This document shows positions 790 through 17,880 of a stretch of DNA of 64,000 nt, piece after piece. Each line of letters starts with the position of its first letter. The first letter of the stretch is position 1. A model generated the notes under the pieces. It was not told where the DNA came from, did no database searches, and was given only the letters and a program-made list of their open reading frames with translations. This stretch comes from Magallana gigas. Lineage: Eukaryota. The position numbers were made by a program, and so were the translations under genes. The stretch lies in NCBI RefSeq assembly GCF_963853765.1, contig NC_088857.1:5952001-6016000 (forward strand). The letters are read 5' to 3'.

Positions 790-1447
790 TCAACCGAACA
801 ATAAAATAAAATCAAAGTACTGATGAACTGACGGGAGTTGAATTTGTCGAATTTGATTTATTTTAAAATCAATGAAATGTTATTTTGCATGACAAGTACA
901 TGTAGTTTCTAATTTGAATTACGCACATTTTTATAATATGAATTTTTGGACTTTTTCGACAAGAATGTCGAGAAACCCCCATATGAATCATGTTAAATAA
1001 TATTTTAAGAAAAAATTAATTCAATCAAGTTATGTATCAGTAATAGAAATATTTCTCGAAAAATGTATGGATCCAAGCAATATTGAACTCTAGTCTCGTT
1101 CAACCAAACGCACGGCTGACACCGTAAATCTCCGACAAGGATTTACGGAGACAGCTGAGTGTCGAGTTGAACGAGACTATATTGAACTCTGGCGTAGGAA
1201 TACATACGACTACAAAAAATATTTAAATTGTCCGTACCATTTAAAATCTGGCTATTTTCAAGGTATTTATAAATAAGTTTCCTTGAAATACAAGGCTTTA
1301 GCATACATTACATCGAATTTATCAATTATTTTCAAGAACTAAGTCTTGTCAGCAACAATGATTTGTGCTGAGGTCCAAACACTGTTTCACTTTCGGTTTG
1401 TCTGAGTAACTGCATAGGAGAGTTGATTAAAATCAACTCCCAAAAAT
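790..1447 (-). mobile_element. Helentron/HINE-like non-autonomous element, family 1, copy A
   Basis: Absent at the equivalent site of unit B (about 12650). Subterminal inverted repeats GGGAGTTGA / AATCAACTCCC, a local hairpin GGAGAGTTGATTAAAATCAACTCCC and an A/T-run end. Related copies at 6580-7500 and 17206-17880. The Helentron label is inferred from structure. Confidence 0.75.
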
Positions 1448-1644
1448 TATATTACGATCTCTAACAGGCAAGTGCTAATGCAGTTTGATGTCAACAATGG
1501 TAACTAATGTATCATGCAAACATGTTCACGAAACGTTCACAAACCTTGCTCTTAATTGTAATGAACTAACAATATCATGAATAAATTACTATAGTGGTAA
1601 TCTTACGTATCGTGATAACATATTGGACAGTTTTTTCATGAACC

Positions 1645-4600
1645 TCAGTCAGACGATGAACTGAGAATAATCACGTAATACATCGTGATAAAGATAAACG
1701 TGAGGGCAAAAGAAAGGCCTCCCACTACGATCGAAATGTTGATCAATTGTCGTGCTTGGTCAGCTTGAGATCGAGCCGTCTCACTGTCTCCCATCTGATA
1801 GCTCTTTTTTGCCTGAAATTCACGTAATTTTAATTCATATATAAGAACCGCATATAAAAAAAAGATGTTATGACAAGAGATAATTTTAGCATCATTTGTT
1901 ACCATGGCTTTTCATATATATAATCGGTTAAAGTTATTTTTAGTTATTTTAATATCTTAAAAAAAACCAAAATTTTAAGAAATCCAATGTGACCACCAAA
2001 TGTTTGATTAGATCAAGATATGTAGAAAAAGCACACAAAAACGATTTCAATTCTTTTTTTATTTTATTTTCTAACTATGTGTTCTTTTGTTTGGTTTAAC
2101 TAACATACCTCTGAAGCGTTTAATAAGGCCCACAACCCCAGAGGCCAGCAACAGCAGAATAAGGCAAACAATGCTCTACCTGTGTAGTCTTCGTAGGGTG
2201 GGGGCACGTGGGTCATCGTCATTGCCTGTGGAGCAACCTGAAGTCAAGGTTTGAAAATCTTGTTAAACGTAATGAAAAAAATTATTGCTTTTATGCATTA
2301 TTTGCATTTAAATACCGCAAATACCAATTGTGCAATACACACACACAATCATTACAGTGACACTGCGCATCTGTTCACAAAGACCAACTTGCATTTGTTT
2401 CATAATATATAGTGTATTCGTGTATTCCCATATTGCACACATTTGATATTAGGTAAAAAATAATAGAAGTGAATTGTGTTTAGATAACAATTATAGTCTG
2501 GTTTTATTTTACCTGTATTTTTCAAATGCATTTCAAAGAAGAGTTAAGAGTATTATGCACATGTAACGTAGTGATGCACTTTTTTAAGATCGATGATTTA
2601 AAATATCTTAATTCTTTAAACTGTTCCTTTAAATTCATTTTATGATACAATAATATTGCTATGTTCAGCTTCTGAAACATACTATTCACTAGCTACTTGC
2701 ACTAATGAATTTACAATGTTAAAACTGGAAACTTAAAATTCATGTGAAAAACATTAGGATATCTTCCAAAATCTACTGTAACATTGTTCATGACAATACT
2801 AGTAACACACTTGTAAAAGTCAATGATTTTATTTATTCCACTGTGTGTGTCAAATTTGCTTTGCTTTTTGTAGCTCTTGAACTGGTATTAAACTAAAATC
2901 TAACAATTTACTATGATACAGACTATAACGATTCAGTAATTTACATACCTGGACAAATTCCTGTTTTCTATAATAGATTTTTAAATGTATGCAAAACGGG
3001 AACAAACCTGAAATATTTATTCTTTTATAGAACAATTAAACATAAAGACGGAAAGTAAATGGAGGATTAAGGTACATACAACATTCGTTGACCATGTTGT
3101 ATACTGTGTAGATTGTCCAATTCCATACCCTGAAACAACAATTAAATATAGAAAAAAAAAATAAAAGAAACACGATGATTTTTTTAATCTATTATCTTTA
3201 TTGCTCTTTTTATTCTTAATAAGAGAGAGTTAGAAAAATGGTACGATGCTATTTAATTTGAACGAGCTGGGTTTTGAATTATATCTCACCTTTCTTTTAT
3301 ATAATAATAATAATAACAATAATAATAATAATAATAGTTCATTTCCAATTTTGGGCCCAGAGGGCATACAAGATTACAGATATTAGATAGAAATGCCTAA
3401 AAGAGAGATTCTACATATTAAAAAAAGTCCATTCAGATACATGAACTTGTTTCTTTCTTTTATATGAAAGAGGCCTTTTTAAAAAGTAAGACTGTGATAA
3501 AAATAAACAAAAGGCCCATGGGCCACAAAGCTTACCTGAGCAACAATAGACATCCTGCATTGAAAGATTTTTTTTTTTAAATTCCAAATGTTCTTATGTT
3601 GAGCCCCTTTTGTAACTAGATGATTTCATATTTATATCAAGTATTGAGCATTGCCATTCTCAGAAAGATCATAAATAACTGTTCCAAAAAAAAAAATTAC
3701 ATCAAACTTTGAACCACTTGTGTATGGCCCAAGACTTATCAAGAGCCACAGTTTAAACAATTGAAAATAAAAAGTTGTCAATTTGCTTGCATATATTTGT
3801 TTTAGTATATACAATTTATTTTAGAATGATCAAATTTATTTAGTATGTCAATTTTTTCTTTGAAGATTTCGCTATATATATTACACTACCTAAAGATACT
3901 AACACACAAGTTACAGCTTTTCTGGTTAATTGATTTTCGAAAAGTAGATTTTTCTCCATACATTCTTATGTAAAGATTTGACCTCTATGGGCTTCACCTT
4001 ACCCCCGGGAATCATACGAAAGAAACTGGAATCTACGCTACCTGTAAGCTCAAGTGAGCTAAAAAGAGCTTCTGCACGTATATCAGGGGGAAAGTATGAG
4101 CTACTTTATGTCTACGTTATAATTCATATGAATCATAATTCATACAAATCCATATAAATACTAATAGTTTTAATAATATTTCAATAGAAAAAAAAACCGA
4201 GTTCCGATATACAATCAATGTCTGTGTATTATTTACCTTGTTCTTTACTTATTTTTTTAACCAATACTTTAAGTAGCTGCAGGACTGTAGCTCCCGGTCT
4301 GAAAAAATTCGGATGGACGACCTGGGAGCTACAGTGCCTCCCATAGTAAAAAACTGCAATTTACGGCGCACAAAAAATTGCGCTAAGTTTGGACTTATTA
4401 ACCTTATTTTCACACAAATTCTGTAAAAATAATTAGAACCATAAAATTCTTCAGCAAATGTACTACTGATATCATCACTTTACTTGCCTCAGACCTTCTC
4501 TTAAACATGATAACCGACCTCGGAAAATGAAGTATGTTAATTTACGTCGAGATCGAGAGTCGCCATTTTTAAATGTAAACAAACATGCACCACTTTAATT

Positions 4601-16971: not shown

Positions 16972-17130
16972 NNNNNNNNNNNNNNNNNNNNNNNNNNNNN
17001 NNNNNNNNNNNNNNNNNNNNNNNNNNNNNNNNNNNNNNNNNNNNNNNNNNNNNNNNNNNNNNNNNNNNNNNNNNNNNNNNNNNNNNNNNNNNNNNNNNNN
17101 NNNNNNNNNNNNNNNNNNNNNNNNNNNNNN
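16972..17130. other. Assembly gap (N run); others at 22404-22532, 23457-23597 and 50242-50372
   Basis: N runs. ORFs spanning them are artefacts and distances across them are estimates. Confidence 1.
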
Positions 17131-17205
17131 TTTATAAAAGATAAGAACTTCAAAATTAATACCCATCCTTCAATTTGTATTACTTTAACAATGTAGCACA
17201 GGCCA

Positions 17206-17880
17206 CTTTTTGGGAGTTGATTTTAATCAACTCTCCTATGCAGTTACTCGGACAAACCGAAAGTGAAACAGTGTTTGGACCTCAGCACAAATCATCACTA
17301 CTGACAAGACTAAGTTCTCGAAAACAATTGATAAATTCGAAGTAATGTATGCTAAATCATTGTTTTTCAATAAAACTTATTTATAAATACCTTGAAAATA
17401 GTCAGAATTTAAATGATACGAACAATTTAGATATTTTTGTAGTCGTATGTATTCCAACGCCATAGCTCAATATAGTCTCGTTTAACTCGACACTCAGCTG
17501 TCTCCGTAAATCTCCGACAAGCAGAGAGTCTCTCTTGCTTGTCGGAGATTTACGGTGTCAGCAGAGCGTTTGGTTGAACGAGACTAGAGCTAGTTCAATG
17601 TTGCTTGGATCCATACAATTTTCGAGAAATATTTCTATTAGTGATACATAGTTTGATTGAATTAATTTTATCTTTAAATATTATTTAACATGATTCATAT
17701 GGGGGTATCTCGACATTCTTGTCGAAAAAGTCCAAAACTTCATATTATAAAAATGTGCGTAATTCAAATACAAATTAGAAACTACATATATTGTTATGCA
17801 AAATAACATATCATTGATTCTAAAATAAATAAACATCGACAAAATCAACTCCCGTCAGTTCTTCAGTACTTTGATTTTTT
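17206..17880 (+). mobile_element. HINE-like family 1 element, opposite orientation
   Basis: Near-full reverse complement of 790-1447: TTTTTGGGAGTTGATTTTAATCAACTCTCC ... AAATCAACTCCCGTCAGTTCTTCAGTACTTTGATTTT. Confidence 0.8.

What the first reader, a model, noticed from the sequence alone, without database searches (positions are those of the whole stretch)
1384..17269. A dispersed transposon carries a near-perfect IRF/ISRE motif and sits upstream of two dispanin (IFITM-related) genes
Seen: every copy of the HINE-like family 1 element contains AAACCGAAAGTGAAAC or its complement, at 1384-1399, 7024-7039 (one change), 7438-7453 and 17254-17269, next to the terminal hairpin. Two sites lie about 0.8 and 1.2 kb upstream of the copy 1 ATG (6235). 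One lies about 1.2 kb upstream of the copy 2 ATG (16050), in the opposite orientation and outside the duplicated block, so it looks like an independent insertion. Established: GAAANNGAAA repeats such as GAAAGTGAAA are the IRF1/2 and ISGF3 consensus, vertebrate IFITM genes are ISRE-driven, bivalves have IRFs and a dsRNA-induced response, and mammalian TEs have been co-opted as interferon enhancers. Inference: this element may spread IRF sites and wire genes into an invertebrate interferon-like network. Caveats: the family is probably high-copy, so proximity may be chance, and a gap lies between copy 2 and its element.
Basis: partly seen in the sequence, partly recalled or inferred. Interest (0 to 1): 0.8.

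Follow-up and report, generated by a model that had tools for sequence, protein, structure and literature searches.

The report
Oyster transposon carrying an interferon-like motif
A common 667-base rolling-circle transposon in this oyster genome carries a sequence that looks like an interferon-response (IRF) site, and three copies have landed around two duplicated dispanin genes, but the two tests I could run give no sign that the motif is used.

Summary
AAACCGAAAGTGAAAC occurs exactly at 1384, 7438 and 17254, and with one change at 7024. In each case it lies inside a copy of one repeat.

**The repeat.** It is a 667-bp non-autonomous Helentron (HINE) with 13-nt subterminal inverted repeats, a 3' hairpin and a 115-nt central palindrome. 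The motif is part of the family consensus (positions 605-620).

**Copy number.** The exact 16-mer occurs 1,873 times in the 564-Mb genome, against 3 for the reversed control. I estimate about 4,000-5,000 copies.

**The genes.** Both dispanin genes are real, intact four-exon CD225 genes. RNA contigs show the splice junctions, and one supports the start codon at 6235. The three insertions are independent.

**The regulatory reading.** It remains only a motif match plus proximity.
- In 60 copies chosen without regard to the motif, it decays as fast as its neighbours (4.2% vs 4.1%).
- None of about 13 CD225 genes sampled in the genome's larger cluster has a motif-bearing copy within its sampled 10-kb block.
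- About 2.6 such site triplets are expected genome-wide by chance.

The idea is still plausible: oyster IRFs activate mammalian ISRE reporters, and this genome has at least four IRF genes. Continuity across the gap at 16972-17130 could not be tested. The scan had not noted this element on other DNA.

The parts
811..1446 (+). HINE copy W1. Full length, 92% identical to the family consensus. It lies just beyond the 3' UTR of dispanin copy 1, antisense to the gene, and is absent from the paralogous block 2.
   Evidence: BLAST of the consensus. Empty-site alignment with 12566-12720. RNA contigs cover 1470-1653, and one covers 1422-1543.
1384..1399 (-). ISRE/IRF-like motif AAACCGAAAGTGAAAC in W1.
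1645..6235 (-). Dispanin (CD225) gene copy 1. CDS exons are 6235-6229, 3129-3080, 2237-2109 and 1812-1645, giving 117 aa.
   Evidence: Pfam CD225 matches both halves, E 5e-8 and 3e-5. GT..AG splice joints 1811/2108, 2235/3078 and 3128/6228 appear in RNA contigs. The translation is in frame.
6577..7500 (+). HINE copy W2. It is rearranged: consensus 1-88 at 6577-6663, 230-666 at 6664-7085, then a tandem second unit 255-667 at 7083-7500. It lies 0.35-1.27 kb upstream of the copy 1 ATG, antisense to the gene.
7024..7039 (-). Motif with one change (AAAGCGAAAGTGAAAC) in the first unit of W2. The GAAAGTGAAAC core is intact.
7438..7453 (-). Exact motif in the second unit of W2.
12845..16050 (-). Dispanin gene copy 2. 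Exons placed by homology are 16050-16044, 14202-14153, 13414-13286 and 13012-12845, and the reading frame is intact.
16972..17130 (.). Assembly gap between gene copy 2 and W4. Continuity was not verified.
   Evidence: 159 N. The two edges share no 12-mer. No paralogous sequence spans it.
17207..17875 (-). HINE copy W4. Full length, 95% identical to the consensus, in the same sense as gene copy 2, and outside the duplicated block.
17254..17269 (+). Exact motif in W4.
1..6353 (.). Block 1 of a segmental duplication. Its partner is 11889-16166, at 87-97% identity. The duplication ends 118 bp upstream of both ATGs.

Best explanation
The element is a young, high-copy family of non-autonomous Helentron transposons (HINE). 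It is 667 bp long and I estimate roughly 4,000-5,000 copies. Its consensus happens to contain, 17 nt before the 3' terminal hairpin, a 16-mer that matches the vertebrate IRF-E/ISRE core at 11 of 12 positions (GAAAGTGAAAC). Every copy inherits the motif from the master element. After insertion the motif decays at the neutral rate. Three separate insertions (W1, W2, W4) landed around two tandemly duplicated, intact, transcribed CD225/dispanin genes. For most copies, and most probably for these three, the motif is a passenger and not a selected regulatory site. Even so, the family supplies roughly a tenth of all GAAANNGAAAC sites in the genome, so it is a real pool of potential IRF sites. What is shown: the element's anatomy, its copy number, the neutral decay, the independence of the insertions and the gene models. 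What is inferred: that the copies have no function.
For: HINE anatomy: there is a sharp 5' end and a 3' end ...CAACTCCCAAAAA in 29 aligned copies. A 13-nt subterminal inverted repeat sits at 23-35 and 650-662. There is a 3' hairpin, and a 115-nt central palindrome of -58 kcal/mol. The empty site in the paralogous block shows no target-site duplication. W2 has a tandem 3' unit, as rolling-circle read-through would give. Published HINE features agree (PMC7492417).

Copy number: the first look found 3,866 candidates. The exact 16-mer occurs 1,873 times against 3 for the control.

Neutral decay: in 60 copies picked by anchors outside the motif, the mismatch rate is 4.2% in the motif and 4.1% in other non-diagnostic columns. 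The motif window ranks 51 of 91, and Mann-Whitney p = 0.46 without CpG columns. Intact 16-mers make up 55-58% of copies, close to the 0.959^16 = 0.51 expected from that rate.

No link to the gene family in general: 190 kb sampled from the C9 CD225 cluster holds about 13 CD225 genes. It contains only two HINE fragments, both without the motif region, and 4 GAAANNGAAAC sites where about 7 are expected.

Chance: at 1,873 sites in 564 Mb, about 2.6 triplets within 16 kb are expected genome-wide. The first 100 sites on C1 show near-Poisson spacing. About 2.6% of random 667-bp segments would carry GAAANNGAAAC, from 22,013 sites genome-wide.
Against: Three independent insertions in 17 kb is about 25 times the genome-wide density. 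Two of them lie within 1.3 kb upstream of paralogous genes whose shared upstream sequence is only 118 bp.

The motif is an unusually good IRF-type site with three AAA half-sites. Oyster IRF2 and IRF8 activate mammalian ISRE reporters (PMC5557890), and CgIRF1 is reported to bind ISRE (PMC13524488). The genome has at least 4 IRF-domain genes.

Dispanin copy 5 has a very similar sequence about 80 nt upstream of its likely ATG, matching at 16 of 18 positions, and that region is not detectably HINE-derived.

Neutral decay of the bulk of copies does not exclude co-option of a few.
Confidence: 0.7

Rival explanations
1. Co-option. The HINE-borne motifs upstream of dispanin copies 1 and 2, and perhaps many other copies, are bound by oyster IRFs and make neighbouring genes inducible by virus or dsRNA. 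This would parallel MER41-type interferon enhancers in mammals.
For: The motif matches the IRF-E/ISRE core at 11 of 12 positions (the consensus is from established knowledge). Oyster IRFs act on ISRE reporters, and IRF genes are present. Two independent insertions lie upstream of two paralogues. Copy 5 has a similar promoter-proximal motif. The family supplies an estimated 12% of the genome's GAAANNGAAAC sites.
Against: The motif shows no excess conservation in 60 copies. No motif-bearing copy lies near the roughly 13 sampled CD225 genes on C9. Copies 3-5 in the window have no HINE. The high copy number makes chance proximity plausible. I found no published evidence that oyster CD225 genes are virus-induced. 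The sites are 0.8-1.2 kb from the ATG, not promoter-proximal.
Confidence: 0.15
2. The motif serves the transposon itself. It belongs to the conserved 3' terminal module that the Helentron Rep/helicase or a host factor recognises, so it persists in master copies for reasons of transposition and not of host gene regulation.
For: The motif lies 17 nt before the 3' hairpin, in the right-hand module that defines HINE ends. In a copy that is 77% identical overall (L017b) and in the 84% unit W2a, the 3' bins stay at 84-92% and the GAAANNGAAAC core survives.
Against: Within the 137-nt 3' region the motif is not better kept than its neighbours. No autonomous partner was identified here or in the published study. 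The higher 3' conservation is slight.
Confidence: 0.1
3. The site is used, but by another factor that reads GAAA repeats, such as a PRDM1/Blimp-like or STAT-type protein, and has nothing to do with antiviral induction.
For: Only the general overlap of GAAA-repeat motifs among factor families, which is established knowledge. Nothing here tests it.
Against: No data. The same lack of conservation applies.
Confidence: 0.05

Closest known systems
Cg_HINE elements of Crassostrea gigas (non-autonomous Helentrons; Vojvoda Zeljko et al. 2020, PMC7492417)
   Same: Subterminal inverted repeats of 11-13 nt. A palindrome at the 3' end. No target-site duplication. A- or T-rich insertion sites. Dispersal over all chromosomes in thousands of copies. 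Tandem repetition of element parts.
   Different: No short satellite-like central repeats and no microsatellite were seen. The repeated unit is the 3' 413 bp of the element itself. The centre holds a 115-nt palindrome. The subTIR and motif strings were absent from the paper's supplementary text, which was cut when stored, so identity with one of the 11 named families is not established.
MER41 and similar primate transposon families co-opted as interferon-inducible enhancers (established knowledge: Chuong, Elde and Feschotte 2016)
   Same: A dispersed repeat whose consensus carries an immune transcription-factor motif, with copies near a candidate antiviral gene family.
   Different: In the mammalian cases, factor occupancy, enrichment near induced genes and deletion phenotypes were shown. 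None of these is shown here, and the two proxy tests were negative. This element is a DNA rolling-circle transposon, not an LTR.
Vertebrate ISRE / IRF-E (GAAANNGAAACT; G(A)AAA[G/C][T/C]GAAA[G/C][T/C])
   Same: GAAAGTGAAAC matches 11 of 12 positions, and an extra AAAC half-site lies 6 nt upstream.
   Different: The last position is A, not T or C. Binding in oysters has not been tested on this sequence.
IFITM genes (vertebrate CD225 subfamily)
   Same: The CD225 domain, a small protein with two hydrophobic segments, and tandem gene clusters.
   Different: Only family-level relatedness is shown (Pfam PF04505). IFITMs proper are a vertebrate subfamily (established knowledge). Neither antiviral function nor inducibility of the oyster genes is known.

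Membership tests
HINE (non-autonomous Helentron) | Subterminal inverted repeats of about 11-13 nt | tested here: met
   GGGAGTTGATTTT at consensus 23-35, with its complement at 650-662.
HINE (non-autonomous Helentron) | Short palindrome or hairpin at the 3' end | tested here: met
   GGAGAGTTGATT..AATCAACTCC folds at -7 kcal/mol and ends 5 nt before the terminus.
HINE (non-autonomous Helentron) | No target-site duplication; insertion in T- or A-rich DNA | tested here: met
   The empty site in paralogous block 2 shows no duplication. The 5' flanks of 29 copies are A-rich. At W1, 23 + 9 extra bases remain unexplained.
HINE (non-autonomous Helentron) | Non-coding, short, high copy number | tested here: met
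   667 bp with no long ORF, 3,866 candidates, and 1,873 exact 16-mers.
HINE (non-autonomous Helentron) | An autonomous Helentron partner sharing the termini | not tested
   Not searched. The published study also found no partner.
ISRE / IRF-binding element | Sequence match to GAAANNGAAAC(T) | tested here: met
   GAAAGTGAAAC followed by A, matching 11 of 12 positions.
ISRE / IRF-binding element | Bound by an IRF and confers induction | not testable with these tools
   This needs EMSA, CUT&Tag and reporter assays. Only mammalian ISRE reporters have been tested with oyster IRFs.
TE-derived interferon-type enhancer (MER41-like) | Motif present in the family consensus | tested here: met
   Consensus 605-620.
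TE-derived interferon-type enhancer (MER41-like) | Motif kept better than flanking element sequence | tested here: not met
   4.2% vs 4.1% mismatch, rank 51 of 91 windows.
TE-derived interferon-type enhancer (MER41-like) | Copies enriched near induced or antiviral genes | tested here: inconclusive
   Only a proxy was possible. None of about 13 CD225 genes in the sampled C9 cluster has a motif-bearing copy within its sampled 10-kb block, against 2 of 5 in this window. No expression data or annotation were available.
CD225 / dispanin | CD225 domain (PF04505) | tested here: met
   Exon 3 covers profile positions 1-31 (E 5e-8) and exon 4 covers 30-67 (E 3e-5), in both copies.
IFITM subfamily | Orthology to vertebrate IFITM; interferon or virus induction | not tested
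   The spliced protein has no reference form, so it could not be sent to the homology tools. No literature on oyster CD225 induction was found.

The most novel reading that the evidence does not exclude
This HINE family has seeded the oyster genome with thousands of functional IRF-binding sites, and a subset has been co-opted to make genes virus- or dsRNA-inducible, including dispanin copies 1 and 2. It would be the first invertebrate case of a transposon-built interferon-like regulatory network, and the first built by a rolling-circle transposon.
Probability: 0.12. Interest if true: 0.8.

Novelty: new member of a known kind. Interest (0 to 1): 0.3.

Why it matters
If the motif were used, it would show that transposons spread immune-response elements in a lophotrochozoan as they do in mammals. 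It would also give a handle on how the oyster's interferon-like response to OsHV-1 is wired.

As it stands, the solid results are these:
- A well-defined HINE family, with consensus, boundaries, copy number and an empty site.
- Experimentally supported gene models for two CD225 genes in a five-gene tandem cluster.
- The estimate that one transposon family supplies about a tenth of the genome's ISRE-like cores. Anyone scanning oyster promoters for ISREs should mask this family first.

Tried and rejected
1. I asked whether the ISRE-like motif in the copy 5 promoter (33657) is a relic of a HINE. Local alignment of 33300-34400 against the consensus scored 26, against a shuffle mean of 26.4. Rejected as not demonstrable. 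The longer resemblance to one variant copy (L017b) is post hoc.

2. I looked for the subTIR and motif strings in the supplement of the Cg_HINE paper and found no relevant hit. The family could not be matched to a named Cg_HINE.

3. I tried to fetch the rest of the C5 cluster and ten singleton CD225 loci.

4. The gap at 16972-17130: no overlap of its edges and no paralogue spans it. Read laying was already spent on gene 1, so continuity remains untested.

5. Literature searches for oyster CD225/IFITM induction and for transposon-derived interferon-type enhancers in bivalves found nothing relevant.

6. The high depth over the HINE in RNA runs comes from other copies, as the loose ends at 1446 and 6577 show. 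It says nothing about these insertions.

7. The spliced 117-aa protein was not sent to the homology tools, because it has no reference form and I did not type it.
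Full report
**Observation**

The 16-mer AAACCGAAAGTGAAAC is present exactly at 1384-1399 (-), 7438-7453 (-) and 17254-17269 (+). It is present with one change at 7024-7039 (-). Shuffles predict 0.12 matches. A two-mismatch match at 33657 lies outside any copy of the repeat. 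The last figure includes a gap of estimated length.

**What the repeat is**

I aligned 27 genomic copies with two window copies. This gives sharp ends and a 667-bp consensus. Its features are:
- a 13-nt subterminal inverted repeat, GGGAGTTGATTTT at 23-35, with its complement at 650-662;
- a 3' hairpin that ends 5 nt before the terminus ...CAACTCCCAAAAA;
- a 115-nt central palindrome of -58 kcal/mol.

These are the defining features of HINEs, the non-autonomous Helentrons described in Crassostrea gigas (PMC7492417). I could not match the family to one of the 11 named Cg_HINEs.

In the element's own orientation the motif reads GTTTCACTTTCGGTTT at 605-620, 17 nt before the hairpin.

The window copies are:
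- W1, 811-1446 (+), 92% identical to the consensus;
- W2, 6577-7500 (+), rearranged as consensus 1-88, then 230-666, then a tandem second unit 255-667, which explains the two sites 414 bp apart;
- W4, 17207-17875 (-), 95% identical.

**The host genome**

The genome is 564 Mb in 29 contigs, and one of the listed RNA runs is labelled oyster metagenome. It holds the exact 16-mer 1,873 times, against 3 for the reversed control. The first look found 3,866 candidate copies. I estimate about 4,000-5,000 copies, or one per 110-150 kb.

GAAANNGAAAC occurs 22,013 times, against 13,221 for the reversed control. Of the anchor-selected copies, 77% keep that core. Scaling the 1,873 exact sites by that retention gives roughly 2,600 HINE-borne cores, about 12% of the genome total. 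This is an extrapolation.

**The genes**

The window holds five CD225 genes, all on the minus strand. Pfam CD225 matches both coding halves of copies 1 and 2.

RNA contigs from three studies show GT..AG junctions at 1811/2108, 2235/3078 and 3128/6228. These give gene 1 the exons 6235-6229, 3129-3080, 2237-2109 and 1812-1645, and an in-frame protein of 117 aa.

Gene 2 has the same structure and is intact.

The 3' UTR of gene 1 reaches at least 1470, which is 24 nt from the end of W1.

**Independence of the insertions**

- The duplicated block ends at 6353/16166, 118 bp upstream of both ATGs.
- Beyond that point only HINE sequence is shared, and in opposite orientation.
- W1 is absent from the paralogous site in block 2, with no target-site duplication.

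So there were three separate insertion events.

**The gap**

The gap at 16972-17130 is 159 N. Its edges do not overlap and no paralogue spans it. I had spent the single read-laying run on gene 1, so continuity and the 1.2-kb distance for gene 2 remain unverified.

**Is the motif under selection?**

I selected copies with two exact anchors outside the motif. This gave 525 genome-wide, of which I fetched the first 60.
- Leaving out subfamily-diagnostic columns, the motif columns mismatch the consensus at 4.2% and the other 81 inner columns at 4.1%.
- The motif window ranks 51 of 91 16-nt windows.
- Without the CpG columns, Mann-Whitney gives p = 0.46.
- The exact 16-mer survives in 33 of 60 copies, and by eye in 25 of the next 40. 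A rate of 4.1% per site predicts 51%.

The bulk of copies therefore decay neutrally at the motif. This does not exclude selection on a few copies.

In more diverged copies (L017b at 77%, W2a at 84%) the 3' bins are slightly better kept and the core survives. That fits a transposon-level constraint on the 3' module as well as anything else.

**Is there a link with dispanin genes?**

CD225 exons occur in three settings: this C5 cluster, a cluster of about 360 kb on C9 with about 20 genes, and about ten single loci.

They contain about 13 CD225 genes and two HINE fragments, neither of which includes the motif region. They hold 4 GAAANNGAAAC sites where about 7 are expected.

In the window, copies 3-5 have no HINE. 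So proximity to the element is peculiar to copies 1 and 2.

**Chance**

Three events in 17 kb is about 25 times the mean density. With 1,873 exact sites, however, a Poisson model expects about 2.6 triplets within 16 kb somewhere in the genome. The first 100 sites on C1 show 3 gaps under 10 kb where 2.7 are expected.

A random 667-bp stretch has about a 2.6% chance of carrying GAAANNGAAAC, so among many transposon families some will carry it.

The coincidence with a candidate antiviral gene family was found after the fact, and oysters have very many immune-type genes.

**What keeps the hypothesis alive**

- The motif is a very good IRF-type site by the vertebrate consensus (established knowledge).
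- Oyster IRF2 and IRF8 activate mammalian ISRE and IFN-beta reporters (PMC5557890). CgIRF1 is reported to bind ISRE (PMC13524488).
- The genome has at least four IRF-domain genes.
- Dispanin copy 5 carries CTTTCAGTTTCGGTTT about 80 nt before its likely ATG. An 18-nt stretch around it matches the HINE sequence at 16 of 18 positions, in a region that is not detectably HINE-derived.
- I found no report of transposon-borne IRF sites in bivalves, or of induction of oyster CD225 genes. The idea is new and untested.

**Verdict**

The observation and most of the anatomy are right, and the element is an ordinary member of a known transposon kind.

The regulatory inference is a reasonable hypothesis that gained no support from the two tests available here. 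I put it at about 0.12-0.15 and the passenger reading at 0.7. The experiments that would settle it are listed under next steps.

Noticed in passing
window 1645-33600 (- strand); G000 C9:40.28-40.64 Mb: Five CD225/dispanin genes lie in tandem in the window. Two more lie just upstream of it at C5:5.937-5.941 Mb. A much larger cluster of about 20 genes lies on C9.
   Followed up: partly
window 33657-33672: The copy 5 promoter carries CTTTCAGTTTCGGTTT about 80 nt before a likely ATG at about 33581, next to a palindromic TTCCGGAA. An 18-nt stretch around it matches the HINE sequence at 16 of 18 positions, but the region does not align to the HINE beyond that.
   Followed up: partly
window 6140-6353: An RNA contig (run X10, record 15, 368 nt) follows the reference only up to 6353 and then continues with other sequence. 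6353 is exactly the end of the duplicated block. This may be a structural variant upstream of gene 1, or a chimera with a paralogue.
   Followed up: no
window 4274-4377 and 4742-4845: A 104-nt inverted repeat, 99% complementary with 364 nt between the arms, lies in the long intron of gene 1. The stretch 4200-5800 is very abundant in RNA runs, so it is probably another repeat family (foldback or MITE-like).
   Followed up: no
window 788-810 and 1447-1455: At W1 the insertion relative to the empty site includes 23 extra bases 5' and 9 extra bases 3' of the consensus ends, where block 2 has CCT. This may be filler DNA or a small deletion, and is unexplained.
   Followed up: no
window 6490-6531: A 42-nt piece matching HINE consensus 105-147 lies between W2 and the gene 1 promoter, with a C14 run at about 6378-6391 beside it. 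It may be the remnant of a further insertion.
   Followed up: no
HINE consensus about 288-402 (window 1091-1200, 7121-7234, 17473-17586): Each copy carries a 115-nt near-perfect palindrome of -58 kcal/mol as DNA. If transcribed within UTRs or introns, it would form a long double-stranded RNA stem.
   Followed up: no
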